A stretch of 64,000 bases of DNA from Macrostomum lignano (GCA_002269645.1 NIVC01000498.1:1-64000); one strand, 5' to 3'. Shown: positions 25,340-58,363, numbered from the stretch's first letter. Numbers and translations: made by a program. Notes: generated by a model not told the origin, from the sequence alone.

Positions 25340-26549
25340 CAGCAATTGCAGTTTCGTGCGTCACCCGATCGCCATATGAGGGCATCGACCTGGCTGTGCA
25401 GAATCTGCAGAGCATGATGACGTCAATGGGCGGTCTCAGTCTGCAAGAGTACGGACTGCCTGCCGCCTCCGCTATGCCGAAAGTCGGGCCGCTGCAGTTT
25501 GACACGGTCGAGCAGGCGGAGATCACCGAGATGCGACTGCTGCTTCCGGTGGTGAAAAATGGTACCCGTGCCAACCATATCCTGGCGTGTGTGAGCAAGT
25601 CCCCGCTATGGTCTTTGTTCCGGAGGCACCGCCTTTCCAAGAACATCCGGCTGCAGAGCTTTGCAGATGCTGAGCTGTACCGTCGCTACATGCAGCTGCT
25701 CATGCAGGTAAGCTTTGTTCTTGTTCCTTCTAAAAGCAGAACACCTGTGCAGCTTGTGACTCTCGTAAATTTTCCTGCCCATCCACACAGATCGGCTCTG
25801 GGTCGGCTGATCAGTCGGACGACACCGTCTGCCTTCCTGCCGAGATTGTCATTCCGGCGGAGGCGTCGCTGTCCGAGCTGATCCAGTTTGTGTACCCTTC
25901 GTTCGAGGCGTCAGCGGAGCGCGACGGCTACTTTGCCAGCCGAGCAATCCTGGCGCCCTACAACGATGCGGTTGACGCGATCAACAACGAGTGCCTGGCA
26001 ATGTTTCCAGGCCAACTGCACGAGTATCGCTCAGTGGACAGCGTGGCTGACGAGGAAGCAGCAACGCATTTTCCTCCGGAGCTGCTGAATCAGCTGGATG
26101 CTCCAAACTTTCCTACTCACCTGCTCAAGCTCAAGGTGGGCATGCCGCTGGTTCTGCTGCGGAATCTGAATCCACCATGGCTGTGCAACGGCACCCGGCT
26201 GACTATCCTGGAGCTGGGCGTGAACGTGCTGCGCTGCAAAGTCGCTGCCGGCCAGTTCACTGGAGATGAGATCCTGCTGCCGAGGATTCCGCTGGAGCCC
26301 AACAATGCTGACCTGCCAGTCTGCTTCAAGCGGCTGCAGTTCCCAGTCAAGCCGAGCTTCTGCCTGACGATTCACAAGTCGCAGGGCCAGTCACTCGACA
26401 CCGTGGGCATCGACCTGGCTGTCGGCTGCTTTGCTCACGGCCAGCTGTACACGGCGCTTTCCCGGGCCAAGAACGTCGACAGCGTGCGCGTCCGAATCTT
26501 CGGTGAGAGAACGAAGAATGTCGTGTACCCTGAGGTGCTGACTGACTGA
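25340..26549 (+). pseudogene. Helitron PIF1-like helicase, C-terminal part, internally deleted, with one intron
   Basis: SLQEYGLP; LLPVVKNGTRA...SPLW...LSKNIRL; phase-0 GT-AG intron 25708-25790 restores the frame; RAILAPYN, LRNLNPPWLCNGTRL, RLQFPV, TIHKSQGQSL, HGQLYTALSR. The Walker A/B region is missing. Confidence 0.9.
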
Positions 26550-27275
26550 ATCTGGGAATGCCAAAGCCGTCACAAGTACAGCCAACTGATATGTAAATGG
26601 TGTTTAACACCAAGGGCCCACGGAAAGCATATCAGTTTAAATCCTGTTACAGTGGCACCATTATCATTCAAAATTTGGAAAGCACCATAGTTTTAGAAAT
26701 TTTAGACTGATAATTAGCAGCCAATAGCTGAAGCAGATATAAAAAAGCTAGATAAAATAATAATGAGCTCTATAGTTAAATTCAGGCACAAACAGCAGCT
26801 TATCCTTAAAGCTAATACGAGCTGAGCACATTGTTGCTACACTTGCAAGTAGTGGCTTGATTAAAAAAATCTTTTTTACTTCAAATAATCAAATTTGTGC
26901 TTAGCGAACAAACTAAACTATAAACTGAAGCAATTCAGCTGTAAGAAAAGAATATTAACTACGAAGTTCTTTATTCTAGTTCCATTAAAGTGCACTCACA
27001 AATAAAAGTGCGAATTATAGTATACTTTAAATTTGAGCTCATGATTTCAAAGTTCAAAGTTTGAAAGATTAAAAGTTTAGACGTCTAGAAGCATTTCGTC
27101 GTCATCATCCTGAGCCGGCTGGACAGGCTGCCGCTGCTGCGGAGCCGGCTGCTGCTGCTGCTGCTGCGGAGCCGACTGGTACTGGTTCTGCTGCTGCTGC
27201 TGCTGCTGCGGAGCCGACTGGTACTGGTTCTGCTGCTGCTGCTGCTGCTGCGGAGCCGACTGGTACTGGTTCTGC

Positions 27276-30200
27276 TTCTTTTTCTTTTCTTTTTCTTTTT
27301 CTTCAGGGCTCCTCCGTATCCGGCTCTGCCGATCTAGAGGGGGGCAGGCGCCCCATGCTGCGAAGTAGGCCGATGATGGCCTCCGGGGACTCCATCAAGT
27401 CCTCGGAGGCGAGCCCGTGGACTGCCCGGTAGCGGTCGCCACAGGGGCAGTCGTGTAGGATGTGGCGCACCGTGTCCTCCGCGCCGCAATCGGGACAGGC
27501 AGCGGAGTCCGCGATGCCAAGCCTGTGGCGGGTGCTGAAGTTAATCATACTGGCGCCAGCGCGGAGCTGGTTTATCAGCACGTGGAGGCGGCGTGGGAGG
27601 TGGGCCGGTGGTGGTTTGGCCGGTGCCGCGTAGTCGGCGTCCATGGCCCGGCGGCGGCGGCGGAGGGCTGTCCTAGCCGCTTGTAGCTGGAGCGGCACGT
27701 GTTGTTGGTCGAGGGCGGCCGCTTCCGATGCCGCTTTGTCGGCCTCCTCGTTGCCCCCCAGACCGCAGTGGGCTGGGACCCAACGGAAGGTGACCGTGCG
27801 GTTACCGGTCGTGAGAGGGAGAAGAAGGTCCCAACAGTCCGACGCCACGCTGTCAGTTTGGGCCAGAGGGCCGGCACTCAGGGCCTGGACCGCGCTCAGG
27901 CTGTCGGTAGCGATGGTGACAGACGGGGGGGCATCGTTGGAGAGAAGGAGCCTAAGGGCCTCGCGGATGGCGACCAGCTCCGCCGTAAAGCTGCTGCACC
28001 AGGCTCCGGCGGGTACGCAGTGGCGGGTACGCAGTGGCGGGTGCCAGGAACCTCCCATTGAGCGATGGCCGCTCCCCCGCCGTTCCGCGAGCCTTCGCCG
28101 ACGGACCCGTCGGTCCAAATGACGCACGGGCTGGCGGCCAGATCGGCGACGGCGGGGCTGACGCGCTCCAGCTTCTCGAGCGCCGTCATCTGGCGGGAGA
28201 CCAGGGCGGTGAGAGAGGTGTCGAACTCAACCGTCTCCGCCCCTTCGGCATCCCAGGGTGGCGGGCCAAGGTGGCGAGCCGCGCGTGGGAGACGGTCGAG
28301 CTCGCAGCCGCTGCAGAGCTCCTCGGCGGATCTACGCCAGCAGCCCCTGTGGGGGCGGTTGGCATCCAAGGCCGCTCCGGGTTGGCGGCTACGCTCTTCG
28401 CCGACGTCGCCTGCCCCGTCGACCCGGTGCGCGTCAGGCGCCGTTCTGGCCTGAGCTGCGTAAGTACGGTTCTTTAGGCGAGGTCGCGTGGTCTTGGTGG
28501 CGATGGTGTGGGCGGGAGTGTCCGCCTGTAGCCGCGCCATACGCTCGCGCAGCATGCTGGCGCGCTCCAACGCGACATGACTGACCGGGGGGAGCTCTGC
28601 GATACTGAGAAGTCGGTCGGTGTGGGTGGTTTGGACGCACCCTGTGATGAGCCGCGCACAGGCGTTTTGTTGTCGTTCAATCATGAGTCGGGTGCTCGGG
28701 CTGCTCCCGCCAGCCAGATTCCGCTGCCGTAGTCGGCCACTGAGCGCACGGTGGCGGTGTAGACCGCTCGAAGGGTGTCTTGAGTTGCGCCCAGTTGGCG
28801 GTGAGCAATGGCCTGAAGGGGTCGTCTGCGGGCGGCCATGCGGCGGCGAATGTCTTTGGCGTGTTCGGCAAAGCCGAGATGGTCGTCGAGTTTCACCCCA
28901 AGGAAGACTGGGTGGGGCTCAAAGGCCAGTTGTTTGTTGCCGATGCTGACATTGAGCCGAGCCTTGCCTCTATTTTCCGCTGGGCTGAGGCTGAAAATGC
29001 TGTAGCTGCATTTGCCTGGGCTCAGCAGCACTTTCCAGCGCTCGCACCAACGTTGGACCGCGTCGAGAGCCGGTTGAAGTTTGCTCGCGCAGTTGGCTAG
29101 CTTGCGGTCCAGGGCCAGCAGGGCGCTGTCATCGGCGTAGAGGCTGGTCTCGACCTCCGGGGCGGCTTCCGCGATGGCCTTTGGCAGGTCGTTCACGTAA
29201 ACCAGCCAGAGGAGCGGGGCGATGACGCTCCCTTGGGGCAGTCCCTCGCGAAACACTCGCTCCTTACTGGTGGCGCTGCCGAAGCGGACCTTTGCGCGTC
29301 TGTCATTGATGAAACTGTTAATCCATCTGAGAAAGCAGACGGGGACGCCGAGTTCGCGCAGCTTACAGATGAGGGCCTTGCGCCAGACCCTGTCGTAGGC
29401 CCTCGAGAAGTCAAGCAGGCAGAGCACTGCTCGTTGAGCCTGCGGGTCCTCTAGTCCGTCGAAGATTGCCTGGGCGATGCGAGCGATCTGCTCTTCGCAC
29501 GATCGGCCCTGGCGGAATCCAGCCTGCACCGAGCTGAGCATCCCGCGGTCTTCGAGGTCGTGGCGCAGGCGGAGGTAAACCATTTTTTCGGCGACTTTGG
29601 CTATGCAGCTAGTCAGGGCCACTGGGCGATAGCTGCCGGGGTCATCCGCGCGTTTTCCGCGTTTGGGTATCGGGATGATGATGGCCCGGCGCCACTGATG
29701 CGTTTGTTAATGAGATTCAGGAGCCTGTTCTCGCTGCGGGCCGGGAGGCGTTTGAGCATCTCGTTTGTCACCTCGTCCGGGCCTGGGCTCTTTCTGGACT
29801 TAAGGGAGCGGATGGCGGAGCGGAGTTCGGTGATGTTGAACTCCTTGCACAGGCCTGATCTGGCGGTTGACGTGTGTGCGCTACATACTGTGCGCATGGC
29901 GGCGAAGGCGTCGCGGTTGATGCTGCGGTCGTCTTTGTGTCGTTTGATGCGGGAGACCTCCGCGTAGATAGCGCAAAATGCGTTAGCTTTGTCGCGGTCA
30001 GTTGTGAGCGCCTTCCCCGGTCTGCCGCGGGCCTCGTCGGCAGGTAGCACCAGCGCGCAGTTGCTAGGCGGAGGTGGCGGGTCTCCTCTCATCGCTCTGG
30101 TCAGCGCAAAGAGGTCGCTGTTGACGTTCAGCTCGGCGACGCGCTGGTTCCAGAAGTTGGCTTTCTCCGCTTTGATGGTCGCGTCTGCCACGCGTCTGGC

Positions 30201-32140
30201 CGTGTGGTACGCGCTGAGGTCTTCCGGTGTTTTGGAGCGCTCCGCTTGCTTTCTGGCGCTGCTGCAGTTCCTGCAGGCCTCGGTGCACGCATCCGTCCAG
30301 AAGGGTTTGCCTCGCCTCTGTCGACATCCACGCGGAATGGAGCCGGCGGCCGCCGTGAGAATCGATTGACAGAGACGCTGGTGGTCGGCGTCAATCCGCG
30401 AGCCAGAGGTGGCTGAGGACGGTTTCAGATGGTCTTCTGCGCGGTCGAGCTCGGCCTTGAAGGACGTCCAGTCGGCTTTGGCGAAGCACCATTTCGCTCT
30501 ATGTTGTTGCTTGGCGGTCGTTTTGGCCTTAGTAAGGGTGAAAACGATGGGCAGGTGGTCGCTGCCGAGGTCTTCAATAGTGCGCCAGGATGTCTTGAGG
30601 GCTGTGGCTAGGCCACTGGTGCACCAGGTGGTATCCGGGCAGCTGAGTCCGCCGGTCGCCGGGTTGGTACGGGTGTGCGTGGCGTCCCGGTTGCAGAGGT
30701 GTAGGCTTTTGCGAAGCGCCCATTCCTCGATGCTGGCGCCCCGATCGTCGTCGGGCTGGTGGTGGTCCCAGCTCCCGTGTCCATTAAAATCACCCGCTAC
30801 GATGGATTTGTTGGCAGTTGGGATGTCGTCCCATTTTGGTTGCCAAAGCTCTTGGCGTTGGTTGCTATCTGGGGGGGCGTAGACCGACACGAGCTTGATG
30901 GCACCGGCCCCCGGGATAGCGATAGTGCAAGCGGTGAGGTCGAGCTGAGCGTGGTCGTTGCTCCATGGTTCGTTGAAGGCGATGTCCTTGCGGACCAGGA
31001 TCATAACGCCTCCGCGGCCGGTAGCGCACTGGATTTTTTTGTGGATTTTTTTTGGGTTATGGCTGCTGTCCGGCCGGGCGTCGACAACGGTCGGTCTTGG
31101 CGCCGGGGTGTCTGCAGGGCGGTTGGTCGTGCGCTCCTGCTCCTGCGTCTGTTGTTGGTTGGACCTGGCGGATTCTTGGCAACATGGGCCGTGGAAGTCG
31201 GCTCTGTAGGCTTTCGTGCTGGGGAGTTGGCTGCATTTGAGGTGCAGCCACTCCTTGCAGCCTTGGCACTGGACACTATATCCCCGGCCGGTCGGGCGGG
31301 AGCAAACAGGGCATTGCCAGGTAGAGGAGGAGCGAGCGCTAGCACTGGCGCCTTGGATTGCTTTAGTTGCTGCCGGTTTCGACTGTTCGGGGCTTGCCGA
31401 GGGGTCCGGGGTGCGGTCCGGTGGAGCGGAACGAGGCTCAGGCCATGGGCGGTTCCGTTCGCTACAGGCAGTTCGTCCGCTGCGGCAACCGGGGCACCAT
31501 CTTGCCTTCTCCTCCGGCCATCTGAGGCGGCATCTCGGGCGAGGTGGGAGGCGCCCGCCGTCTGCCGAGAGCGGGTTGTTGTTCGTAGCGGCAGCCCCAT
31601 GGGCCGTGGTGGTCGCGGCGATGGTCGGTTGGTCGAGGAGGACCTCAGAATCGGCTTTCGGCAGTCCGTCCTTGCGCGCTGCCACACTGTACCCGTGCGG
31701 CGGTTGGAAGGTGGCGCCAGGGCGGAGTTTAGTCTCTTGGAGAAGGACCGCGCAGGGGCGCAGCTGGGCTAATCTCTCGGCTAGCTCCGTGCGACGGGCC
31801 TGCAATCCATTACAGTTGAATTGAAGGACCTGGAGCTCTGGGCCGGGTTTGGAGCTGCGCCTGTGCTGTCTCCTACTCCGCCTGGGGTGGGGGTTGGGCG
31901 CGTCGTGGACCGCGTCTCCTCCCCTCAGCCGCAGGACCGTATTGATATTTCCGTCCATTTCTGCCTCATCGTGTCTGGCAGTGGGGACGTGGGCTGGGCC
32001 AAGATGTTGATAGTTGCAGCATCCCTGATGGTTGCGACACTTAGTCACCCGCGTGCAGCGGGCGTCCAGGGGCCCCTCGTGGAGGAGGTCGCTTGCCACA
32101 GGAAGGTGATGGCCTTCCTGCACCATGATCGTCTGGTCCC
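27276..32140 (-). mobile_element. LINE D: Ingi/I-group-like non-LTR retrotransposon (leader-VLRLRGG-APE[PHD insert]-RT-RNase H)
   Basis: APE (LQFNCNG, LLQETKL, GDFNGH, SDHLP), RT (GLPQGS, YADD), RNase H (WVPAHCGLGGNEEAD), C-terminal CPDC...H...C; (GAAAAA)n tail; 11-bp TSD actggttctgc at 27265-27275 and 32141-32151; several frameshifts. Confidence 0.92.
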
Positions 32141-32388
32141 ACTGGTTCTGCTGCTGCTGCTGCTGCTGCGGAGCCGACTGGTACTGGTTCTGCTGCTGCT
32201 GCTGCTGCGGAGCCGACTGGTACTGGTTCTGCTGCTGCTGCTGCTGCTGCGGAGCCGACTGGTACTGGTTCTGCTGCTGCTGCTGCTGCTGCGGAGCCGA
32301 CTGGTACTGGTTCTGCTGCTGCTGCTGCTGCTGCGGAGCCGACTGGTACTGGTTCTGCTGCTGCGGAGCCGACTGGTACTGGTTCTGC

Positions 32389-35300
32389 TTCTTCTTCTTC
32401 TTCTTCTACGCAGCCCCCGCGTCGCCGCTGTCCGGCGGCTGGGGGGGAGGGCGACCTGCAGGCCGCCCCATCATCCTCAGATACCGGCAGATTCCGCCCG
32501 CGTCGTTGAGGTCGAGAGGGTGAGCAAGGCGGGCGAGTCTCCGCGTGGACACTGCTGCAGGAGGTGCTCTTCTGTGTCTTCGTCTCCGCAGTCCGGACAG
32601 AGCGGAGTCTCGGTAAGGCCGATACGGTAGCGGGTGGCCGCGCAGGCTGTGCTGCAGCCGGCCCTCAATTGGCAAACCGCCACCGTCTCGCCACGAGTCA
32701 GGCCGCCGTAGCGCTTCCAGGGCGAGCTACGGTTCAAGAGCTTGAGATCGAGGTGTCGCCTGGCTCGTTTGATGGCAGCCCTGGCGGCTTCGAAGGCGAT
32801 GGGCTGGTCCTGCGTCAGGTCCGAAGCCCGGTTCGCCGCCTTGTCGGCTCTTTCGTTGCCATCGACGCCGACGTGGGCCGGCACCCAGGTAATGCGGACC
32901 GGGCGAGCTTCTTGACTGAGCAGGCTCCACACCAGCTGTCCCATGGGCTCGCGTTGGTCAGCTGGCCCGCGCTGCAGGGTGAGGATGCCCGCCATGCTGT
33001 CCGTGAGAATGTCGATGCTGCCCCCGTGTGGTTGCTGGAGCTGTAGGCAGCGGCGGATGCCTAGAGCTATAGCCGCTAGCTCCGCCGTCGTGCTGCTGCA
33101 GACGGAGCCAGCGGCTGTCGTGTGTACTTCGCCCACAGGAGGGTGTGCAGGACGGCCGCGCCACGGCCGTCCCGGCAGCCGTCCGTGGCGCTGCCGTCAG
33201 TCCAGATGACGATATCGTGTTGAGGTCTGGATTCCAGGGCGTTGATGGCTCTCTCCCGTCTGATGCTGTCCGGCACTTTGCGGCCGCAGGTGACCTGCAG
33301 GCTGGTGTCGAAGCTGACTTCGCTGGGTGACTGCCATGGCGGCTCGGGCATCGGGAAGGGGGCGCGCCTCCCCGCTGGCTCGAGGGCGTTGATGCCGAGC
33401 TCCAGTGCGGCGCGCCTCCAGCAACCACGGAAAGGCCTGCGGTAGTCGCTCTCCAGCAGGACCCGGTCATCCACCGGGTGTTGCTCCGTAGCCACGCCTC
33501 GTGAGCACGGGATTTCAGGCGGGGCGGCAGGGTCTAGCGGCAGTCTGGTGCACCGGGACCTCCCGGGCAGCCTCAGAGCCCGTTCCCGCAAGGTCGCCGC
33601 TCTCTCCAGGATCAGGTGTCCGATGGGCGGCAGGTCTGCGGCCGCGAGGAGCGCCCTGACGTTCGTGGGCTTAATGCACCCCGAGATGATCCTGGCGCAG
33701 CAGAACTGTTGCCGTTCGATGAGAAGCCTGCTGCTCGGCGCCGCAAAGGCACCCCAGATTCCGCACGCGTAGTCGGCAATAGCACGCACGGTGGCGACGT
33801 AGGCAGTGCGGAGGACGTGGAAGGAGGCGCCGCCGCTACGAGTCGCCAGGGCGGCGAGGGGCCGTCGGCGGACTGCCATGCGGCGGCGGATATCCGCCAC
33901 ATGATGTTGGAACGTTAGCTGGCCATCAAGTTTGACGCCGAGGAAAGTCGGGTGGAGCTCAAACTGCAGAGGCTCGCCGCAGATGCTGAGGTGCGGGCGA
34001 ACTTTCCCATTGGTCTCGTTGGGTGCCAACGAAAAGGTCGTGAAACAGCACTTGTTGGGGCTAAGTTCGACCTTCCACCGGCGGCACCATTCAGCGGCTG
34101 CGTCAAGGGCCGGTTGAAGATTGATTGCGCAGCGCTGAAGAGTGGTGGCTGAGCAGAGGATGGCCGAGTCATCTGCGTAGAGGCTGACTGCTGATTGAGG
34201 GGCTGCCCGCGAGATGGCTTCCGGTAGGTCGTTAATGTAGCAGTTCCAAAGCGTAGGTGCGAGGACGCTGCCCTGTGGCAGTCCTTCCCTGAAGCAGCGC
34301 TCGCGGCTGGTGGCAGCGTTCCACTTCACCGCTGCCCTGCGTTGGCAGAGGAAACCGCGGACCCATCTGATGATGCGGCGGTTGATCCCCATGCGGAGCA
34401 TCTTGGCATAAAGCGCTGCTCTCCAAACCCTGTCGTAGGCGCGACAGAAGTCTAACAGGGCAAGAATGCTGCGGATGGGAGGCTGCGATTCGAGGCCGTC
34501 GAAAATATCCTGACATATCCTGGCTATCTGCTCGTCGCAGCCGCGGTGTCGGCGGAAGCCAGCCTGGCAGGGCGTCAGGAGGTTCTTGGTTTCTAGCGTC
34601 CAGTTGAGTCTGGCTAGCACCATACGTTCGGCGCACTTGGCGACGCAGCTCGTAAGCGCGACCGGTCGATAGCTGCTCGGGAGTTTTGGGACCTTCCCCT
34701 TTTTTGGCACTGGGATGATGACCGCTCGGCGCCAGCTGTTCGGCGTGGAGCCGTCTTTCCAGCTGCGGTTGATGAGGTGCAGCAGGCGTTCGTCGATCTC
34801 CGCTGGTAGGTGCTTAAGCATTTCGTTGCTGACGCCATCCGGGCCGGCCGCCTTACCGGACTTCAATTTACGGAGCGCGGTGCGGAGTTCGCCCAGCGTG
34901 AAGTCGGCCGCGGTCGGGTCTTGGGCCTCCTCTTCGGACTGCCGGAGGCCGCTGTTGGCTTCGTAGCGGATGGCTGCGTCATTCGCCCGTCGTTCAACCC
35001 TGCTAACCTCGGCATAAAGCTGGCAGAAGAGATTTGTCTTTTCTTTATCGGAGTTGCAGGTGCGCGCCGGGCGACTGCCGGAGGCCGGTCTGCTAATTGC
35101 CGCAGGGTCGCGTCCCGTGGGCGCTTCGCCGCGCATAGATCTGAGCAGCTTAAAAAGGTCAGAGTTGGCATCGAGCGCTTCCGCGCGCTGTTCGAGGTGA
35201 TCGCGGCGCTCTTTTCTAATGACCTTGGCGGCTTGGTGACGGGCTCTGTTGAAGGCTGTAATGGCCTCTTGGGTCTGAAGTTCCTCAGCTTGGGACCGGG

Positions 35301-36965
35301 CAGCTTGGGTTTCCGCGCAAGCATTTGAGCAGGCTTCGGACCAGAATGGGGCCCGACGTCCCGCCGTGCTGCCTCTCGGGATGCTCTTATGTGCTGCCTT
35401 CAGGATCATGCTGCTGAGCGCTTCGGCCTCCTGGTCAATGGTCATGGCGTTCGCCGCTGACCCAGTAGGGTTGGGCTGTTGGGCGCAATGGTTGGCCTGG
35501 AGTTCCGACTTGTAGGTTGTCCAGTTCGCTTTGCGATAGTTCCAGCGGGGGGGGCCTCGTTTATGCACTGGACGGGGCGCCGCGGCGTTGAACAGGATCG
35601 GGAGGTGGTCGCTACCGCAGTCTGGTCCAGTCCTCCAGCTGCGTGTGACCGTTTCGGCCAAGGAGCCGGAAACGCAGGTAATGTCCGGGGTTGACCGTTT
35701 GCCGGTGGCGGGGCTAGTCCTGGTATGAGCATTGCTGTTGCAGATAGCCAGCCCATTTCTGGTTGCCCATTCCTCGACGCGCTGTCCTCGCTGGTCCTCT
35801 TCCATGTGGTAATCCCAAGCGCCGTGGGCGTTGAAGTCGCCTCCGATAATAGTGCGATTATTGGTCGGGATGCGCTCCAGTGGGTTGTCCTCGGTGTTTT
35901 CGCCGGCAGATCTTTGGGCGCTGACTGGCGGTATGTATATCGAGACCACCAACAGGTCCGGTTGATGAGGCAAACTGAGCCTACACGCTGCGATGTCGCT
36001 TCCGTCGGTGGCCGGCCCCCTCTTGACCGTGCTGTAGCAGATGTTGGAGCTCACTAGTATCATCGCGCCCCCGCGGCCTGTGATTCTGTTTGCGTTCTTA
36101 GGGTGGATCTGGCTGGGCTGTGGCGCCGTGACCTCTGGCTCGTCGTCGGTCTGGGTGAGTGGTTGGCCTGGGTCGGTGCCGCGTCTGAGGCATCGGCGGC
36201 GCCCAGAGCAGCCGCTGCACCAGTTCGTCGGGTTGGCCGGCTCGCGGCGCTTGCAGGTTGGGCCTATGTGTGTCGTCGCTTGCGATGTATTCCCGGTTGC
36301 ACCATCCCGTGCCGGTTCATTGTTATCCGGCGTCGGATCCCGGTTGGTGCAAGCGGTGCGGCGGGATCGGCATCCGGGGCACCACTGTTCTCGGGTGTCC
36401 GGGAGTCGAGTGCGGCAGCGAGCAAGTTTTTTGGGCGGTCCGGCGCTGCCGTGTTGTTGTTGTTGCGTCGGTCGGGCCTCGTCCGCCGGTGCCGTTGATT
36501 GTACCGGGGCGTCCGTGTCCGGGTACGGAGTCCCGTCGCTCCTGGCGGCGACGACGTAGCCGGGTGGTGGGCGGAAGTCGTCAGAGGCCTTGAGCTTCGT
36601 CTCCTGCAGGAGAACGACAGCGGGGCGGTCGATGGTCAGCCGATGGGCCAGCTCCGTGTAGCGGCTACGAATGCCATTGCAGTTCAACTGCAAGAACGGG
36701 AGCTCTGGGCTTGGCTGATCGTCGACGGTCGACTTGCGCTTCTTGCGTCGCGCTCTGGTCGGCCTGCTGTCACTGCCTCCGCGAAGCCGTAGGACACGGT
36801 GGAGGTTGTCCTGGGGTTGCTCGGTCGAAAAGGATGAGGATGATCTGCGATGGTGTGGACCATTAGTCATTCCCGAGCTATCGCTCAGGTCCAGGGGCTC
36901 CCGGGGTCCTGGCCGATTGCTCATGTCGGCCGTTTCCCCTTCTCGGAGGATGTCCACAGGCCCCC
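32389..36965 (-). mobile_element. LINE C: Ingi/I-group-like non-LTR retrotransposon (leader-VLRLRGG-APE-RT-RNase H)
   Basis: ORF 33076-37431 holds APE and RT (GLPQGSVLAP, YADDS); RNase H in ORF 32477-33136; (GAA)n tail; TSD actggttctgc at 32378-32388 and 36966-36976. Confidence 0.93.
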
Positions 36966-37206
36966 ACTGGTTCTGCTGCTGCTGCTGCTGCTGCTGCGGA
37001 GCCGACTGGTACTGGTTCTGCTGCTGCTGCTGCTGCTGCGGAGCCGACTGGTACTGGTTCTGCTGCTGCTGCTGCTGCTGCGGAGCCGACTGGTACTGGT
37101 TCTGCTGCTGCTGCTGCTGCTGCGGAGCCGACTGGTACTGGTTCTGCTGCTGCTGCTGCTGCTGCGGAGCCGACTGGTACTGGTTCTGCTGCTGCTGCTG
37201 CTGCTG

Positions 37207-40200
37207 TTGTTGTTGTTGTTGTTGTTTGCGCTGAAGGCGCGAACATCCTAGTTTGCATCGTTCTCTTTCCACTTGGTGCGGTACCAGGCCCAGTACCGGA
37301 GCGCCACCTCTGGATGCTCGTTGAGGTGGTGCAGCTCCGTGGGCCCGTCCAGCCTTCGCCTGATCTCCGTGGCCGGGCACTGACTGCTCACATGTACGAC
37401 CGTTTCTTCTTCGGTCCCGCACGCCGGGCACATTGCGTCGGTGGTTCTGCCTATCCGCCGGCAGTAGGCCCTCAACTCCAGCGAGTGGCCCGTGCGGAAT
37501 CGAATAAAGCTAACCGCCTCCGCCCTGTTCTTGTAGGCTGGGTGCCTGGCCGTACCGAGGTGGCCATAGGTGTCTTTCGATCTTTCGTGCGACCAGTACC
37601 TGCTGTTCTGGCTGGCCGCCTTCGTCTCGGCTGCCAGTCGTCTGCGGACAACGCTCGCCAGTACTCCGGCCTCCGCCTGCGGCAGTGTCGTCGCGCCGCC
37701 GGCCACTTCGTCCGCGGCCTCGTTGCCTTCCAGACCGCAGTGGGCCGGCGTCCAGCAGAGCGCAATCACTCGTCCGGTCTGGCAGGTCCTCGATAGCAGC
37801 TGGCGGATCTTTGTCGCGATCGGATTGCGGCCTCGGCCCTGCACTGCGAGGAGCCCACTCTTGCTGTCGGAAGCTATTAGCGCAGTTCTCCACGCCGGCT
37901 GCTCGCTGAGCCATTCCACCGCTAGCTCTAGGGCGGTGAGCTCGGCTTGCAGCGAGGAGGCCGGCTGCCCGGCTGCCCTCCGGATGCTGATCTGATCTCC
38001 GACCTGCTCTCCTGTTAGACGCCCGTTCCGATAGATGACCGCACCGCTGCCGCCGCCCTCCCTCCGCACCGATCCGTCCGTGAAGATAGTGATGTCCGGG
38101 TCTGGGCTGGCCTGGTTGATCTTCGCTTGGGCCATCTCAAGGTTTCCGGCGCGCGACTCTTTCCTGGCATCGTCGGTGGATACGAAGAAGCTGATGTTAT
38201 CTCTCCAACTCTGCCACGGGGGGAGGTCCGACATGTCCTCTAGCCTAGCCACCTTGGCTAGACCGGTGTTGGCGAGACCCTTCCTGGCCTGGGCTCTCCA
38301 GCCCAGCCTCTTCAGCCTTTGCCGGGTCTGCTGGGTGCCGAGGCGGTATCTTGGCGAGCTGTGCTCGAGCCTGAGCCATCGGTCCAGTTTTGCGCTCCAT
38401 ATCACCTCGCTCTGCTCCCGGATCGACATCATCCCGCTTTCGCAGCGTAGGGCCTCAACCGGGTGGTGGCGACCGCGCCGGTAATGATGCGTTCCGCGCT
38501 GTGCTGCACCACTTCGAGCTTACGCCAGGCCGCGCAAGTGAGCCACGGCATCCAGGCGCAGGCCCCATACAGCATCTTGCTCCGGATGAGGGCAACGTAG
38601 GTGTTGCGGATCAGCTCGGCCTGCCAGCCCCAAGAGCTGCCTGCGAGGCGCCGCATTAGGTTGAGGCGGTTCCGGCAGCTGTGGATCACATTGTCAGCGT
38701 GCGCTGTGAACCTCAGCTGTCTGTCAAACGTAAGCCCGAGGAACTTGGGCTGCTCAACCCATTGCATCGTCTGCCCTTAAAGCACGACGTTCGTGGCACC
38801 GGCCCTCTGCGGGGTCATCGCCGGGTCACTGGAGAAGAGGGTGAGCGAGCATTTCCCCGTGGCAACCGGTAGCAGCCATGCTTTGCTCCAAGCCTCCAGG
38901 GTGTCAACCGCCTTCTGCTGGGTGGACAAGGCCTCCACTACTCTTCTGCTGCTGGTCCAGGTGGCTAGATCGTCCGCATAGCCGCTCACCTGCAGGTCCG
39001 GGATAGCGTCAAGTTGCCTGAGAAGGTCATCGATGAAGACGATGAAGAGCAGCGGCGAAAGCACGGATCCCTGCGGCAGCCCTTGCCGGAAAAGTTCCCG
39101 CTTGCTGTCCACGTCGCCGACCCGGACGCACGCCAGCCTGTTCGCTAGCCAGCTCTGTATCCATCTGACCGTTTTTGGGCCAATGCCAGCTTTAAGCAGC
39201 TTGATCAGCAGCCCGTCACGCCAAACCTTGTCGAACGCGCGCGCAAAGTCGAACAGCGCCAGAACCGTTAGTTTTCGCTCTTGGAAGGCGTCGTCAATCG
39301 ATTGGGACAGCCGGAGCAGTTGATCCTCCGTGGACCTGCCCCCTCTGAACCCCGCTTGCGCTTCGCTGAGACCGCCGGTGGACTCCAGAACATGCTTGAT
39401 TCGGTTCGCAAGCACCCGTTCCATCCACTTACCTAAGCTGGAGGTTAGGCTAACCGGGCGGTAGGATCCTATGTCCTTGGCGGGCTTTCCGCTCTTAAGA
39501 AGAGGTATGATGCGGGCCGTGCGCCAGTTCTGCGGCGTGAAGCCGCAGTCATACAACCGGTTAAACAGCTTCAGGACCTCTTGGAGCGCTTCACGGGGGA
39601 GCGCCTTCAGCAGCTTCGGGTGCAGTCCGTCCATTCCGGCGGCTCTGTTGGCGTCCATGCTTTGCAGCGCTGCTAGCAGCTCGTCCATGGTCATGGCTTG
39701 ACAGTCCTCGGTGGTGGGGGTAGCGGCGCTTTGTCTCAGCCGGGCGTTAATTTCTCTGCGTGCCCATCTGTGACTGGCCCTAACGGTGGTGGCGCTGACC
39801 TTGGCGTATACCTTCGCAATGATGTTGGCCTTGGCTCTGTTCGACTTGTACCTTTTGCCTTCGTACTCCAGGATCTGGTCCCCGCTTTGGGGGGGCGTCG
39901 CGCCGTTCAGTTGCTTCAGCAGCGACCACATCTTGTCCGCCGTCGCATTGCTATCCAGCTTGTCCCTCCATCGATCCCTCTTATTCTCCTGCTGTTTCTG
40001 CTTGATCTGCCGGTCCAGGTGCTTCCAGTCCTCAGACTCGATACCCTCACTCATTCTGATGTTGTCTCTCTCCGCCGTCAGGAGCTGGACTTCCTCGTCG
40101 ATGAACTCAGCGTTCCTGGTTTTCCTGGCCACCATGCCCACAGCCTTGCGGGCCGCCTTCACCAGGCACGTTCGCAGCTGTTCCTCATGCTCCGAGTTGC

Positions 40201-42620
40201 TGAGAGCCATAAGGTTCGCGCTCTTTAGGTGCTCTCTGACCAGACGCTGGTACAGCGGCCAGTCCGCCTTCTTCCAGTTCCAGCGCATGATCTTCCTGGT
40301 GCTGGGGACCGGGTCTGCGTTCTCTGCCCTGCGGCTGATGATGATCGGCAGGTGGTCGGAGCTTAACCTGTTAGCTGTCCGCCATTCCCACTGGTCTAGC
40401 TCCGCTTGCGGGACTATGGTCACGTCCGGCGAAGACCTGTGTTCACCGTCCCAGCTGGTTCGGGTGGTGGATCCATCGTTCAGCGCCGTTAACATCTGCT
40501 CGTCCATCCAGTCGGCGAGCTCCTCGCCTCGCCTGTCTCTGGGGAGTTGTTGTCCCACAGCTCATGGTGTGCGTTCCAGTCGCCGGCCAAGAGCAGGTTC
40601 TCGCCGCCTGGGATTTGCGCCAGCTCGGCTGCTGCCATGTAGCACGTGGCTTGGGGCGGGATGTAGATGTTGATCAGCAGCAGTTGTTCTAGACCTTGCC
40701 CGCTGTTTGCTTCAAAGTATAGCCTGACGCCTAGCATTTCTAGCGGCGAGTTGGTCACTGGCGCCTGTATCCTTTCGAACCGCAGCCCGTGTCTGATGAT
40801 GGTCACCAGGCCTCCCCCTCTCGCGCTGTGGTGTTGCCTGTGCCGGTTGCGGTCCGCACGTAGCACCGTGTAGCCTGGCCAGGCTAGCAGCTCGTCCTCG
40901 GCCTTCAGCTTGCTCTCTTGCAGCATAATGACATCGGCATCTTGCTGCCTCACGAGCTCTTTGAGTTCCGGCTCCTTGGCCTTGAAGTGGTCACAGTTCC
41001 ATTGTATGATGGTGATCTTGCTGGTCTTCGGCTCTCCGCTGCACCCTGCCGGCCTCTGTTGTCCGTCCGCTATCTGTGCCTGACCAGCGGCGGGTGGTGG
41101 GGGTGGGAGCGCTGTGCCTTTTGGCATGGCTGCGGCCTCGTGGGCGCATTCGTTGCATGTCCAGCCCCGGTGTTTCAGACTTTCGATTTGCCTCCGGGTG
41201 TAGGTCCTGTGGCAGCAGGACCAGTGAACCTTCTTGCCGCAGTTCTTGCACTCAGCCCCTTGTCCTCTTCTCCTGAATCTCTTGCATTCCGCACACCGGC
41301 CTGCCCTCTCAGCGGCGAGCGGTCTCTCCGAACTGTTCCGGGCTAGGCTGGGCCGTTGGGGTGGTTCTGTCTCCCCGGTGTTATCGGCTGTTCTGCTTCT
41401 GTTGTTGGCGGCGCAGGGCTGGCATATCCAGCTAGCTCCTTCGTCAGGTCTCCAGCGCGAGATGGTCGTGCAGGCGCGATGGAAGACACGGTGACATTGT
41501 GCGCACGGGGTGCCGCTGTGGCCGGCCCTGATCTTGCGATCGCACTTGCCGCAATAGCTCTGCTCTGCCTCTGCGGGGCCACCTGGTCGAGCGTCGGGGT
41601 TCCGCCGGATTTTTTAGTTTTAGGATTGGGTGGCGGATTCTCCCGGCTGTCCTCGACTTCGGTGAGTCTCCTCCCCACCGGCGAGTTGATGGTACTGGTT
41701 TGCTCCTCTCCGAGCCTCTCCAGGCCGCTCCTATTCGCTGTCACGTCCTCGTCAGCCCTCGGTATTTCGATGCTAACTTCCGCAGCTCCTGCTGTCCGGC
41801 CTTCCATCCCGTCCAAGGCGGCCGTGGCCATCTTCACCGCTTGGCGCAACCTCGCAGACATCGCCCCGCTGCACCCCGTACTCCTGTTGAAGGGTCTGAT
41901 GTTGTCCTTCTTGATCCATGACGCCTGCCCAGAGCCAAACCAGCTGACCGGCACGTCATTGCTGCCATGCGCAATGCGGCTGAGTGCCGCTGCCGCGTCA
42001 CACGCTTGCAGGCGCTCGGCCGGCCACCAGGCCCAGCCCCTGAGCTTGGCCCAAATGATGTTGTTCCCGCTTCTCGGGTCTTCCTCTTGCTTGTCCTGAG
42101 TCACGGTAAGCTTGCTCTTCGCGTCACTCGCCGTGCCACGCCCGCCTGGTTGCTTGCCCCACTTGGGCTTGTCCTCTCCTGGCATCCTGCCGGGCGTGCT
42201 GGCGGTTGGCCGGCTTCCTTGGCAGCATGGGCCTGTCCAGTCTCCAGCCTTCTCCGTCGCGTAGAATCTACCTCTGGGCAGGCCGCTGCACTTGAGATGG
42301 AGGTGGTTTCCGCAGTCCTTGCAGCGTGGGCCCCGGCCCGTGGCTCGTTTGCAGCAGAGCCCACATAGGGTGCTCCGAGCCATGGGTGGCCCCGGGTTGC
42401 TCTCAACGTCGCCTGCTCTGAGCAGCAGGGGCCTGCTGTCAACCTTGTAGGGCCTGAAGCCGCTGCCTTTTCCCCTGTCCGTGCCCATACTCCGGTGATG
42501 CGACCTGCTCCTCCGATGCTGGGTGTTCATATCTTGGATGTTCGGCTTCAGTATGCTTCCTTTCGTGCCTAGCCGTCCTCGACTAGGTTCCACAGCACAC
42601 CGCTTGGCGGTATGGAAGCT
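37207..42620 (-). mobile_element. LINE B: Ingi-like non-LTR retrotransposon (2A-PHD-PWWP-PHD-APE-RT-RNase H)
   Basis: GDVESNPGP; PHD-like Cys/His fingers; WAKLRGWAWWPA; APE (IQWNCD, LQESKL, GDWNAHH); RT (GLPQGSVLSP, YADD); RNase H (FTDGS, WTPAHCGLEGNEAAD); (AAC)n tail; inserted in a CAG run; four frameshifts. Confidence 0.93.
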
Positions 42621-42627
42621 GTGCTGC
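42555..42627 (-). ncRNA. Putative HDV-like self-cleaving ribozyme at the 5' end of LINE B
   Basis: Manual fold: P1 GCAGCAC/GUGCUGU (G.U first pair), P2 GCUUCC/GGAAGC, P3 ACC/GGU with loop GCCAAGC, GG after P1, P4 CCUAGUCG/CGGCUAGG, J4/2 CGAA. Confidence 0.6.
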
Positions 42628-43146
42628 TGCTGCTGCTGCTGCTGCTGCTGCGGAGCCGACTGGTACTGGTTCTGCTGCTGCTGCTGCTGCTGCTGCGGAG
42701 CCGACTGGTACTGGTTCTGCTGCTGCTGCTGCTGCTGCGGAGCCGACTGGTACTGGTTCTGCTGCTGCTGCTGCTGCTGCGGAGCCGACTGGTACTGGTT
42801 CTGCTGCTGCTGCTGCTGCTGCGGAGCCGACTGGTACTGGTTCTGCTGCTGCTGCTGCTGCTGCGGAGCCGACTGGTACTGGTTCTGCTGCTGCTGCTGC
42901 TGCTGCGGAGCCGACTGGTACTGGTTCTGCTGCTGCTGCTGCTGCTGCGGAGCCGACTGGTACTGGTTCTGCTGCTGCTGCTGCTGCTGCGGAGCCGACT
43001 GGTACTGGTTCTGCTGCTGCTGCTGCTGCTGCGGAGCCGACTGGTACTGGTTTTGCTGCTGCTGCTGCTGCTGCGGAACCGGCTGGTTCTGATTCTGCTG
43101 CTGCTGCTACCGCTGATGATGCTTGATGCTGCTGCTGCTGCTGCTG

Positions 43147-44305
43147 TTGTTGTTGTTGTTGTTAGTTGGCCCAAACGCGCCCAGGATCCATGCAGAACCT
43201 GGCCAGCGCGACCAAACCATCAGGGTAATCGGACAAGTTGCTGAGGGAGAGCGGAGCTCCAATGAAGCGACGGCGGGCGGCCTCGAGAGCAGGGCACGCT
43301 GTCCAGTGCTCAAGGGTGTCTGGTTCGAGAAAGCACCTTTGGCACGTCGGATCCACCGTGGGGTCCATGAGGGCGCGGAAGGCTCCGAAGAGGCTGGAGT
43401 GGCCGGAGCGCAGCCGGGCAAGAAGGACAGCGTCTTTGCGGTTAGTAATAAGCCGACGTTCCTTTTCGGCGTCGGCGGAGGCATAGGTGAGACGAGATCT
43501 CGCGTGGGTGACCGGCTTGTCAACCAGAGTGCGGCGGATCACCGAGGCGGCAGTGGGAAAACTGATGCTGGGGCGCGGTGCTTCATCGGCGTTGGCGGCA
43601 GCGGAGTTAGCAGCGCGGTCCGCGAGTTCATTGCCCGGAATGCCGACATGACCCGGGACCCACAGGAGAGCGCGGCAGTTGTGCGGGAAGCGGAGGGAAG
43701 AGGCCAGGCGGCTGAAGGGACGCTGAAGGGCGCGCAGAAGAGACTGACTGTCAGAGCAGATGATGGCAGGGCGCGTGGGGTGCGAGCGGAGGTAGTCGAG
43801 GGCTAGGACCAGAGCGCGGAGTTCCTCTTCAAAGGAGCTGGTGTAGCGGCTGCCAGCGGACGTGCGGGCTTCCACGGTCGTCGGGACTGCCGGGTCTCCG
43901 ATGGTGACCACAGCGGCCGCCCCGCCAGCCTCGGAGCCGCCGGCCGCCGAACCATCGCAGTAAATGACGAGCTCAGCCGGGTGAGACCGGATGACGTCGA
44001 GAGCGGCAAGACAGCGCTCCAACGGGGCGTGGTGGCCGGAGGCAAAGGATTGTCAGCTAGGATCGCCGGAAGATGTTGGTCCAGCCAGGGGCATGGGAAG
44101 GCCGGTGTGAGCGGCAGACGCGGCGTGAGATCAATGCCAAGGCCATTGGCAAGCTGAGCCGAGCGGAGTCTCCAGCTACTGCGGGCGAGCCGGTGTTGCA
44201 CGGTGCCCGAGAGGGCGATGGCGCGAGGATGGTCGTTGGGCAGCCTGAGCGCGCGTTCCCTGGCGATGAGGCAAAGGCGGTCGCTGGTGTTCCTGTAGCT
44301 GCCGA
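43147..44305 (-). mobile_element. LINE A: 5'-truncated RNase H-bearing LINE
   Basis: YCDGS...ELRAL...SDSQS...WVPGHVGIPGNELAD, then CQRC...EHWTAC; (AAC)n tail; flanked by a ~76-bp direct duplication of host sequence. Confidence 0.9.
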
Positions 44306-45325
44306 TGCTGCTGCTGCGGAACCGGCTGGTTCTGATTCTGCTGCTGCTGCTACCGCTGATGATGCTTGATGCTGCTGCTGCCGCTGCGCAGTCAGCGCCG
44401 GGCAACGCCGGACTGGATGCGGCCCTGGCACTAAGGTAGCAGTAAACTGTTGAATCAGAGAGAATTAACGTAACTATGAGTACATCAAACAAATAAGCTT
44501 GCAGCTCATAAAACAAATAGGGAAAGGAAATTAAACTTACTATTGTTCCTTGGCCGGCGCCCTCCACGGCGCTGCCCTGAGTTTGAGTTCGTGGTGTAGT
44601 TGTTCACTATCTTCATACTCGTACGAGTATTTGCTGGCCGGTGCTGTTGCTTAGCTCAAGTATTAATGACGAAGAAAACAAATACGAGCATAATCTCAGA
44701 GCTCTTGCCTCTTGGCTTGCCTCATTGCGATCTTTTATAGGGGCGCACGAGCGCAGAATTGAACCGGTGGGCCGGTATTTTTTGTTTGATTCGGTAATTT
44801 ATTTAATTAGTCTTTAATGACTTTGATCCAGCAGGTGCAGCACGTATCAGATTTAAGTTTAAAAGGTGAGCTGCGAGGGAATTGAACACTGAGCTATATT
44901 GATCAGCTTTACAATGAGGCGACCTGCCGCTACTTCTTAAGCCGGTGGGTTTCAGAGCTAATTACGGCCAGGTAAAAACGTAAAGATTGCCAAACTTAAT
45001 TGATCAATTATCAAATTCAATCATGAATAAGTAGAAAAATTGGCTTTTAAATTTAATTGAGCAATTATTAAATTAAATCATGGTCAGGTAGAAATGTTTA
45101 GCTTTCAAACTTAATTGATCTGTTATAAAATTTCAGCCGCTGCCCCACCCCAGCCTAATTACATGTACGAGCTACTCTAGCTGTCTGGTGCAGCTAATAA
45201 AATAAAAGATATTTTATTCGGATGATCTCAAAGTTTGTCTAGCTGCAACTCAAACCGTCTCCCAACCTTTTTTATTTCATTTTTAAACTGCTATTTTCCA
45301 GTATTTTCTGTTCTCTTTGTAACAA

Positions 45326-58024: not shown

Positions 58025-58363
58025 TGCAACGCCAGTGACGCCTCTGTATGATAGGCAACTGTGTTGCCTTTGGGTAACAATATTTTTTGCTGTAGCTGCT
58101 TTTCCAGTCGTTGCAGAGCGTACTGCTTGCACCGCGACACCTGGAGCCCCGCTACAGAAGTAGTACGTTTGCTCTGAAAGAAGGCAAGTTTGGTTGAATT
58201 TGTCAGTTTGAAAATTCTACACAAGCACGTTTTATTGGTACATAAGCCCCAGAATTAAAATGAGAATTTGATTCCTAGCCCCCCCCCCCTAAGAATTATT
58301 TTCATTTTAAAGGATTCGTCCCTTGCTTATTGGCCACCCCGAAGGGGGGCGCTAGATTGCTAG
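58025..58363 (+). mobile_element. Helitron 3' end (hairpin plus CTAG|T), inserted in Gypsy pol
   Basis: Inverted homolog of 51842-52162; ends ggccaccccgaaggggggcgctagattgctag|t. Confidence 0.75.

What the first reader, a model, noticed from the sequence alone, without database searches (positions are those of the whole stretch)
32100..42640. All three 5'-intact LINEs open in frame with the polyQ frame of the target
Junction codons: D CAG AAC CAG TGG GAC CAG ACG ATC ATG; C CAG AAC CAG TGG GGG CCT GTG; B CAG CAG CAC AGC TTC CAT ACC. Each is stop-free from the repeat through a ~55-70-codon leader into the enzyme ORF. Inferred: the elements borrow host transcription and translation as C-terminal fusions and are released by the motif ending each leader. 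Caveat: in this copy exon 1 splices into a frame that shifts to the Ala frame (AAAAAAAEPVPVGS) after ~44370. Reaching the Gln frame needs a 1-nt indel and a TAG to be secondary lesions, and each leader also has its own ATG.
Basis: partly seen in the sequence, partly recalled or inferred. Interest (0 to 1): 0.85.

Follow-up and report, generated by a model that had tools for sequence, protein, structure and literature searches.

The report
LINEs inserted in-frame in polyQ repeats
Four different LINE retrotransposons sit in one CAG-rich repeat of a dead gene. The three full-length ones read in phase with the CAG (glutamine) codons from their first base and carry a peptide-release motif, which suggests but does not prove that they are translated from a start codon supplied upstream.

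Summary
On the minus strand, LINEs B, C and D are joined to a 42-bp repeat (NQYQSAPQQQQQQQ). Each is stop-free and in phase with the CAG codons from its first base.

The leaders are 78, 64 and 75 codons long. B's leader ends in a canonical 2A motif (LLLRAGDVESNPGP). C's and D's end in VLRLRGG, which aligns with the LxRLRAGD part of 2A in sister LINEs and copies only the tail of ubiquitin.

In the window alone the phase match is weak evidence (about 1/3 to 1/27), and the host Gln frame is closed upstream by stop codons. All copies carry frameshifts.

Outside evidence strengthens the case:
- In Macrostomum lignano a D-like LINE sits in the proven coding frame of a polyQ/C2H2 zinc-finger gene.
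- An empty-site paralog of that gene exists.
- The RNA-seq-derived annotation gives one host-LINE ORF.
- A further metagenome-run copy is also in CAG phase.

Best reading (about 0.5): these are CAG/polyQ-targeting single-ORF LINEs that rely on upstream-supplied transcription and start codons and shed the upstream peptide. Translation as a fusion, and cleavage at LRLRGG, are not shown. I rate it a new variant of known kinds (target-specific LINEs, 2A-bearing LINEs).

The parts
44541..44616 (-). Putative host exon 1 (ATG at 44616, 76 nt, phase 1). A TATAAAAG lies at 44739-44732. The donor is ATA|GTAAGT.
   Evidence: read from sequence, no transcript evidence
44306..44446 (-). Start of host exon 2 (acceptor CAACAG|TTTACT; alternative acceptor 16 nt further on). 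It holds the first CAG run, an extra G and the TAG (44352-44350) that closes the Gln frame. Positions 44381-44306 are copy 1 of LINE A's 76-bp target-site duplication.
43147..44305 (-). LINE A: 5'-truncated (RNase H plus C-terminal zinc knuckle), stop at 43164-43162, (CAA)5 tail. At its junction it is in the AGC (Ser) phase, and it has an internal frameshift.
42624..43138 (-). Target-site duplication copy 2 (43138-43063) followed by 10 full 42-bp units (AACCAGTACCAGTCGGCTCCG(CAG)7-9 = NQYQSAPQ7) upstream of LINE B.
37207..42623 (-). LINE B (5.4 kb): 78-codon leader, 2A motif, PHD-like finger, PWWP, APE, RT, RNase H, stop at 37250-37248, (CAA)n tail. The ORF is broken several times.
42387..42428 (-). 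2A/StopGo motif LLLRAGDVESNPG|P at the end of B's leader.
   Evidence: motif as defined in PMC3708506
41814..42062 (-). PWWP domain of LINE B (Pfam E=1.6e-11).
36967..37206 (-). 5.5 units of the 42-bp repeat between B and C. The last 9 bases, CAGAACCAG, are the 5' copy of C's target-site duplication.
32388..36966 (-). LINE C (4.6 kb): 64-codon leader, APE, RT, RNase H. The ORF is open for 1297 codons from base 1, with one frameshift near 33130. Stop at 32408-32406, (GAA)n tail. The 3' flank CAGAACCAGT is at 32387-32378.
36775..36807 (-). NLHRVLRLRGG at the end of C's leader (ubiquitin-tail-like; aligns with the LxRLRAGD part of 2A).
32142..32387 (-). About 6 units of the 42-bp repeat between C and D. 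The last 9 bases, CAGAACCAG, are the 5' copy of D's target-site duplication.
27275..32141 (-). LINE D (4.9 kb): 75-codon leader, APE with a PHD finger (31313-31206), RT, RNase H. At least 3 frameshifts (about 29700, 28700, 28020). Stop at 27305-27303, (GAAAAA)n tail. The 3' flank CAGAACCAGT is at 27274-27265.
31917..31949 (-). NINTVLRLRGG at the end of D's leader.
27077..27274 (-). Last 3 repeat units and the host 3' end. The Gln frame ends QPAPQQRQPVQPAQDDDDEMLLDV, with TAA at 27079-27077. The Ser and Ala frames stop a few codons earlier. An AATAAA lies at 26975-26970.

Best explanation
What it is: a clade of single-ORF LINEs (endonuclease, reverse transcriptase, RNase H, zinc knuckle) that inserts in sense orientation into CAG-rich, usually polyGln-coding, DNA.

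Shown:
- Four mutually diverged members sit in one 1.2-kb repeat.
- Two of them (C and D) sit at the identical position, with a 9-10-bp target-site duplication.
- The 5'-complete elements start at a fixed terminus ((T)GGG...). Their ORF is open and in phase 0 from that first base, so CAG triplets upstream are read as Gln in the same frame.
- The leaders end in a 2A StopGo motif (B) or in VLRLRGG (C, D). VLRLRGG occupies the same place in the alignment and looks like a 2A derivative that lost NPGP and gained a ubiquitin-like tail.

Inferred:
- The elements have no promoter or start codon they can rely on.
- They are transcribed through from the target gene.
- Ribosomes that started upstream read into the leader.
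- The upstream Gln-rich peptide is shed by ribosome skipping at 2A, or by a deubiquitinase-type cut after GG. The same enzyme is therefore made whatever lies upstream.

In this window the system is a fossil. The host gene is broken and its Gln frame is closed, and all four LINEs carry frameshifts.
For: - Target preference: every hit of this LINE clade and every (CAG)n run of 4 or more in the 64 kb lies in the one repeat. The elements share less than 65% nucleotide identity, so the insertions were independent.
- C and D share both junctions and the flanking CAGAACCAG(T).
- The phase and the open frames are shown. The other two frames of each leader hold 2-3 stops.
- M. lignano L006/L008: a D-like LINE (66-76% nt identity) starts TGGGACC directly after ...CAGCAGTCGCTAATG. 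It is in the only open frame of a zinc-finger/polyQ exon (0 stops against 9 and 6).
- The empty-site paralog L009 reads ...CTAATG|CAGCAGCGC... and continues into a further C2H2 finger and the stop codon.
- The annotated proteins PAA56246.1 and PAA91395.1 span host plus LINE. That annotation derives from RNA-seq transcript assembly (PMC5730564).
- L007: another LRLRGG-type copy lies behind Gln-rich CAA/CAG DNA in the same phase.
- Conserved leader residues lie upstream of C's first ATG and upstream of any ATG within the M. lignano element.
- NLxxV[LM]RLRGG is invariant in five leaders that are 28-49% identical, and it aligns with L[IL]RLRAGD of 2A in sister LINEs.
Against: - The host Gln frame in the window has three stops early in exon 2. 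Exon 1 splices into the Ala/Ser frame or the Gln/Ala frame. Both lesions of the Gln frame predate LINE A, because they are in both copies of its 76-bp duplication.
- B, C and D each have an in-frame ATG 6-32 codons in, in good context.
- The sample is five insertions, two of which share a site.
- L007 has an in-frame TAA two codons before the junction.
- The M. lignano copy is truncated and passively co-transcribed.
- No ubiquitin fold is detectable in the leaders, so a deubiquitinase cut is speculative.
- 2A-type relatives in metagenome contigs are not in CAG repeats.
- A precise, conserved 5' terminus argues for a defined RNA 5' end, which a simple read-through transcript would not give.
Confidence: 0.5

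Rival explanations
1. Own start codon, and the phase is a coincidence. Each LINE is translated from its own first ATG after read-through or internal transcription. The leader is just the N-terminus of the ORF. 2A and its derivative serve an internal purpose, as proposed for other LINEs: dosage control, or separating an N-terminal product. The CAG phase follows from a fixed target position plus a small sample.
For: - ATGs sit at codons 6 (D), 15 (C) and 32 (B) with a purine at -3.
- N-terminal 2A is common in LINEs that are not site-specific and that have their own Met (PMC3708506).
- C and D share one junction.
- All three frames of the repeat are open.
Against: - Five of five 5'-complete copies are in CAG phase, including insertions at three different target sequences.
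- The M. lignano element has no ATG of its own before the conserved QEGH block, and C's conserved REG lies before its ATG.
- 5' UTRs of 0-15 nt would be poor for scanning initiation.
Confidence: 0.22
2. The start codon comes from the spliced leader. In Macrostomum the trans-spliced leader ends in AUG and acceptors are CAG. Any CAG of the tract, or the CAG that abuts the element, could accept the leader. That places AUG in phase with the CAG codons and so with an ORF that starts at base 1, whatever frame the host protein uses. The release motif would then remove a Gln stretch of variable length.
For: - The M. lignano leader is ...TTGCATG. The cis acceptor motif is CAG and the top trans acceptor motif is YTNCAG (PMC8629364).
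- C and D abut CAG| exactly, and B abuts (CAG)9|.
- This model explains the phase even where the host Gln frame is closed, and it explains why leaders need no ATG of their own.
- The nearest relatives of these LINEs are in M. lignano.
Against: - The source organism of the window is not identified.
- No spliced-leader gene is in the window.
- (CAG)n and AACCAG lack the pyrimidine context of the enriched acceptor motif.
- No leader remnant is seen at any junction.
- In L007 the nearest upstream CAGs would run into a TAA.
- No RNA data were available.
Confidence: 0.15
3. The RNA has a defined 5' end, made by an internal promoter or by a self-cleaving ribozyme as in L1Tc and R2. The element is cut free of, or starts independently of, host RNA, and is never a fusion. 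The CAG phase is then only a by-product of endonuclease target choice.
For: - The 5' terminus (T)GGGACC is identical in the window's D and in M. lignano at different targets.
- G-rich starts resemble capped or ribozyme-generated ends.
- L1Tc/ingi elements combine a 5' HDV-like ribozyme with an N-terminal 2A (PMC4035085 abstract).
Against: - No HDV-like or other ribozyme family matches at E<=5 over 26500-45000.
- The first 150 nt fold only slightly better than shuffles (z -0.4 to -2.1), and the 5' pairing seen in L006 is absent from D.
- It does not explain the conserved coding sequence upstream of the first ATG.
Confidence: 0.1

Closest known systems
L1Tc / ingi of trypanosomes, and the metazoan 2A-bearing LINEs of Odon et al. 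2013 (PMC3708506)
   Same: A single ORF with endonuclease, RT, RNase H and a C-terminal zinc motif. A D(V/I)ExNPGP motif lies near the N-terminus, just before the endonuclease (B here; sister elements). Expression occurs in a co-transcription setting.
   Different: Here the elements sit in CAG/polyGln-coding repeats in the codon phase. No Pr77/HDV-like ribozyme was found. Two lineages have replaced NPGP by an LRLRGG tail. The cited papers propose dosage control or domain separation for 2A, not removal of a host peptide.
Microsatellite- and repeat-specific APE-type LINEs (Waldo, Mino, Kibi, Koshi, Dong; PMC3812793)
   Same: Several independent insertions lie in one simple repeat, in one orientation and at fixed positions. 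The 3' tails are short repeats ((CAA)n, (GAA)n).
   Different: The known targets listed there are ACAY, AC, TC, TTC and TAA. A CAG target inside coding sequence, and a coding-phase relation to it, are not described there. The clade is also different, since those are R1- or Tx1-type elements.
R2/R1 rDNA elements
   Same: They depend on host transcription. The ORF is open to, or near, the 5' junction, and the 5' junction is precise.
   Different: R2 is freed from the 28S co-transcript by an HDV-like ribozyme, and its target is non-coding. Here the target is coding-type sequence and the proposed release is at the protein level.
Natural ubiquitin fusion proteins (polyubiquitin, UBA52, RPS27A) processed after LRLRGG
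   Same: The sequence (T/N)LHxVLRLRGG is followed directly by the functional protein.
   Different: Only the last 11 or so residues resemble ubiquitin. No beta-grasp domain is detectable. The motif aligns with 2A of sister LINEs, so it probably arose from 2A rather than from a captured ubiquitin gene.

Membership tests
APE-type non-LTR retrotransposon (LINE) | Endonuclease (Exo_endo_phos) and reverse transcriptase (RVT_1) in one sense ORF, with a 3' tail and target-site duplication | tested here: met
   Pfam hits as strong as E=1e-35 for RVT_1 and 3.8e-17 for the endonuclease, plus RNase H. Tails and 9-10-bp flanking repeats were read.
Target-site-specific LINE | Independent insertions at the same nucleotide position and in the same orientation of a repeated target | tested here: met
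   C and D (below 65% nt identity) share the 5' junction CAGAACCAG|T and the 3' junction tail|CAGAACCAGT. A and B both have tail|CAGCAG.
Target-site-specific LINE | Copies restricted to that target genome-wide | tested here: inconclusive
   In the window, 4 of 4 copies lie in the only CAG-rich repeat. Two outside copies follow Gln-coding CAG/CAA DNA. P0001 is preceded by non-polyQ sequence. The source genome could not be searched.
2A (StopGo)-bearing LINE | D(V/I)ExNPGP in the N-terminal region of the ORF, upstream of the endonuclease | tested here: met
   Met for B only: LLLRAGDVESNPGP at 42428-42387. C and D lack NPGP, so the feature is not met for them.
2A (StopGo)-bearing LINE | Ribosome-skipping activity | not testable with these tools
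   This needs a reporter translation assay.
Ubiquitin fusion processed by deubiquitinases | A complete ubiquitin (beta-grasp) domain before the GG | tested here: not met
   No Pfam ubiquitin hit at E<=10. BLASTP (15 residues) and hhalign (15 columns, probability 65%) align only the C-terminal stretch ending in VLRLRGG.
Ubiquitin fusion processed by deubiquitinases | A C-terminal LRLRGG directly followed by the cargo protein | tested here: met
   V[LM]RLRGG is invariant in C, D, P0041, P0001 and P0073. Whether it is cleaved cannot be tested here.
L1Tc/ingi-type element | A 5' Pr77 hallmark with an HDV-like ribozyme | tested here: inconclusive
   No Rfam ribozyme match at E<=5 and no conserved 5' fold. 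Covariance models can miss pseudoknotted HDV-like ribozymes.
   Met in M. lignano. Not met as the sequence stands in this window, because the Gln frame is closed by stops and the exon-1 splices lead to other frames.

The most novel reading that the evidence does not exclude
A flatworm LINE clade has become an obligate 'exon rider'. It targets CAG tracts because each CAG is both a Gln codon and a splice acceptor. A start codon therefore reaches the element either from the host ORF or from the AUG that ends the trans-spliced leader. The variable polyGln head is then removed by a 2A peptide, which in some lineages has evolved by an Ala-to-Gly change into a ubiquitin-tail cleavage site.
Probability: 0.2. 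Interest if true: 0.85.

Novelty: new variant of a known kind. Interest (0 to 1): 0.66.

Why it matters
If the phase relation is functional, it would be a LINE strategy not described in the papers I could search. That strategy is parasitising coding repeats in frame, taking transcription and translation initiation from the host, and cleaning up the product with a release peptide.

It would also give the widespread but unexplained N-terminal 2A of LINEs a concrete function, namely insulating the enzyme from whatever is translated upstream. And it would show a 2A evolving into a protease-type site.

It further bears on how polyGln genes decay and expand. Here one gene took four insertions and about 16 kb of extra DNA in its repeat.

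The claims are directly testable in the transgenic model M. lignano.

Tried and rejected
1. Finding the source genome or uninterrupted paralogs of the 42-bp-repeat gene. Exact-protein look-ups of C's ORF found nothing. A metagenome scan for the repeat core found nothing. The host frame in the window therefore stays unresolved.
2. Homology search with the leader profile in the word-indexed database. It gave only two irrelevant hits, and a repeat with the M. lignano leader gave none. The exhaustive representative search was what found P0041 and P0073.
3. Metagenome loci L001-L005 are distant LINEs without informative leaders.
4. The idea that the leader is a captured ubiquitin was rejected. Only the tail matches, and the motif aligns with 2A.
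5. An HDV-like ribozyme at the 5' ends got no support.
6. 2A-type relatives L010, L011 and L012 were checked for CAG targets and show none. CAG targeting is therefore not a property of the whole 2A-bearing clade.
7. P0001's 600-residue in-frame upstream part has no Pfam domain and no DNA on record, so it was not counted as a case.
8. L006 and L008 turned out to be duplicates of one insertion, with the same break in RT. They are counted once.
9. No paper found in the library links LINE 2A or LRLRGG to host fusions.

Full report
**Layout.** Everything relevant is on the minus strand. A putative gene starts with a TATA-like box (44739-44732). Exon 1 runs from the ATG at 44616 to 44541, followed by a 94-nt intron with consensus ends. 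Exon 2 starts at 44446. It runs into a 42-bp tandem repeat, AACCAGTACCAGTCGGCTCCG(CAG)7, found in four blocks: 43115-42630, 37206-36973, 32389-32141 and 27276-27112. In the Gln frame the gene ends ...QPAPQQRQPVQPAQDDDDEMLLDV, with TAA at 27079-27077 and an AATAAA at 26975.

**The four LINEs.** Four GC-rich LINEs interrupt the repeat: A 44305-43147, B 42623-37207, C 36966-32388 and D 32141-27275. Pfam finds endonuclease, reverse transcriptase and RNase H in them. B also has a PWWP domain and D a PHD finger. They are mutually unalignable or below 65% identical at DNA level, so these were four separate insertions by four lineages. No other copy of this clade, and no other (CAG)n run of 4 or more, exists in the 64 kb. 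That argues strongly for target preference.

**Check of the observation.**
- The quoted junction codons are correct.
- The Gln frame of each upstream block continues without a stop into B (to 41343), C (to 33076) and D (to 29613).
- The leaders measure 78, 64 and 75 codons.
- B's leader ends in LLLRAGDVESNPGP, a textbook 2A. C's and D's end in NLHRVLRLRGG and NINTVLRLRGG.
- C and D share both junctions, CAGAACCAG|TGGG at the 5' end and tail|CAGAACCAGT at the 3' end. That gives a 9-10-bp target-site duplication at one position of the unit.
- A and B have (CAA)n tails joined to CAG runs.
- A is 5'-truncated. It has an exact 76-bp duplication (44381-44306 and 43138-43063), and at its junction it is in the AGC phase.
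- All copies are defective. C has one frameshift, D at least three and B several. B's open frame ends before its endonuclease.

**How much is chance.**
- All three sense frames of the repeat are open, so continuity with the repeat is automatic. Only the choice of the Gln phase carries information.
- C and D share a site, so the window alone gives roughly 1/3 to 1/27.
- The parts of the leaders before their own ATGs are 93, 42 and 15 nt. The other two frames of each leader contain 2-3 stops.

**The host frame.**
- Exon 1 is 76 nt (phase 1). Joined to the stronger acceptor it gives ...DCAAAAAASSIISGSSSSRIRTSRFRSSS, which is Ala then Ser.
- The acceptor 16 nt downstream gives ...TAQRQQQHQASSAVAAAAESEPAGS, which is Gln then Ala.
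- The Gln frame of the repeat has three stops early in exon 2, the last being the TAG at 44352-44350.
- The extra G and the TAG are present in both copies of A's duplication, so they are older than A's insertion.
- The real frame of an intact paralog could not be determined. The source genome is not in the searchable collections.

**Outside evidence.**
- An exhaustive profile search with the leader plus the endonuclease start (alignment A1) found P0041. This is PAA56246.1 of Macrostomum lignano.
- Its locus L006 shows an exon that encodes a Gln-rich protein with two CX2CX12HX3-4H fingers. That frame has 0 stops in 284 codons against 9 and 6 in the other frames.
- The exon is followed directly by a D-like LINE...CAACAACAGCAGTCGCTAATG|TGGGACCGAACG..., in frame. 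The LINE is 66-76% identical to D.
- L008 is a duplicate of the same insertion. Its annotated protein (PAA91395.1, 982 aa) runs 680 residues into the LINE.
- A paralog, PAA93933.1 at L009, is the empty site...TCGCTAATG|CAGCAGCGCAGTCCTCATGAGTGCCCGCAGTGC...TAG. It continues into a third zinc finger and the stop.
- This proves two things. The element's first base is the T of TGG, and the LINE sits in the true coding frame of that gene.
- The GenBank annotation of this assembly is a genome-guided transcript assembly from RNA-seq (PMC5730564). Host-LINE chimeric transcripts are therefore on record. Any exon insertion would be co-transcribed, though, so this is not evidence of adaptation.
- A further LRLRGG-type copy, from a public sequencing run (L007), follows ...CAACAGCAACTTCAGCAGCAATAACAAC|GGGGACAC. 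The Gln reading of the flank is again the phase of the LINE ORF, but a TAA sits two codons before the junction.
- Counting the window's three, all five 5'-complete insertions are in CAG phase. That is about 0.004, or 0.012 if C and D count once.

**The leaders.**
- Five LRLRGG-type leaders (C, D, P0041, P0001, P0073) are only 28-49% identical, yet they keep N-L-x-x-V-[LM]-R-L-R-G-G and a G in a QEG/REG block.
- That block lies before C's first ATG. The M. lignano element has no ATG of its own before it. This implies translation entering from upstream.
- Pfam finds no ubiquitin domain. BLASTP and profile-profile comparison match only the last 11-15 residues of ubiquitin/NEDD8.
- Aligned with sister LINEs from metagenomes, VLRLRGGD falls on L[IL]RLRAGD of ...AGD[VI]ExNPGP, at the same distance from the basic stretch and the LQFNCNG start of the endonuclease.
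- The simplest history is a 2A that lost NPGP while an Ala-to-Gly change produced a ubiquitin-like tail. The tail's conservation after the loss of NPGP points to a new function, most plausibly proteolytic release. This last step is inference.

**Mechanism and rivals.**
- The best-supported model is read-through expression with an upstream-supplied start and removal of the upstream peptide. I put this at about 0.5.
- The own-ATG model (0.22) is favoured by the good ATG contexts and by 2A-type relatives that are not in CAG repeats and have their own Met.
- The third model follows from Macrostomum biology. The spliced leader ends in ATG and acceptors are CAG (PMC8629364). A leader spliced to any CAG of the tract, or to the CAG abutting C and D, would start translation in exactly the observed phase, even where the host Gln frame is closed. 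No RNA data or leader gene were available to test it.
- The fourth model is a ribozyme or internal promoter that defines the 5' end. It is suggested by the identical TGGGACC terminus at different targets. Rfam finds no ribozyme, and folding is near background.

**Comparison with known systems.**
- N-terminal 2A in single-ORF LINEs is known (L1Tc/ingi; Odon et al. 2013). The functions proposed there are dosage control and domain separation, not removal of host sequence.
- Repeat-specific LINEs are known for ACAY, AC, TC, TTC and TAA (PMC3812793), not for CAG in coding sequence.
- No paper in the library links LRLRGG or ubiquitin tails to retrotransposons.
- I therefore class this as a new variant of known kinds.

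**Verdict.**
- It remains unproven, and in this particular locus it is contradicted by the present state of the host frame.

Noticed in passing
window 62705-64000 (+), runs off the window end; 69-bp tandem array at 61951-62391: An ORF of more than 431 codons matches the Mononegavirales RNA polymerase (Pfam E=3.4e-47). It is an endogenous fragment like the L gene of a negative-strand RNA virus, sitting next to a 6-copy 69-bp repeat.
   Followed up: no
window 25396-26549 (+) and 49280-49831 (+): Pif1-type helicase pieces (Helitron-like) lie directly 3' of the host gene. A replication-protein-A OB-fold ORF lies further on. The region is dense with transposons.
   Followed up: no
window 12407-13060 (+), 58352-58993 (-): Fragments of LTR retrotransposons: an integrase core and an RT-RNase H.
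   Followed up: no
window 52509-56260: A 24-bp satellite (TTATCAAGTGCAGTAATCCTTGGT) of about 157 copies at 79% match.
   Followed up: no
window 42062-41814 (-) and 31313-31206 (-): LINE B carries a PWWP domain after a PHD-like finger, and LINE D has a PHD finger inside the endonuclease region. These chromatin-reader domains could steer insertion to transcribed gene bodies.
   Followed up: partly
window 44381-44306 and 43138-43063 (-): LINE A is flanked by an exact 76-bp duplication, far longer than the 9-10 bp of C and D. The duplication contains both lesions of the host Gln frame (the extra G and the TAG).
   Followed up: partly
window about 32122-32097 (-); L006 about 1972-1999: A hairpin in D's leader (CAGGAAGG/CCUUCCUG) is kept in the M. 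lignano copy as CAGGAGGG/CCUCCUG. One A-U pair has changed to G-C, and the second change costs an amino-acid replacement. This is a single covarying pair, so it is only anecdotal.
   Followed up: partly
window 27112-43115 (-), repeat blocks versus LINEs: The 42-bp units are 96-100% identical across all four blocks, while the LINEs between them have accumulated frameshifts. This points to concerted evolution of the repeat. Alternatively, some frameshifts may be indel errors of a long-read assembly in GC-rich DNA.
   Followed up: no
L009 919-4182 and L008 5790-8397: Both M. lignano loci have the same upstream neighbour, an IntS14-like gene with a VWA domain. The filled and empty sites are therefore duplicated copies of one region, as expected from this species' partial genome duplication.
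   Followed up: no
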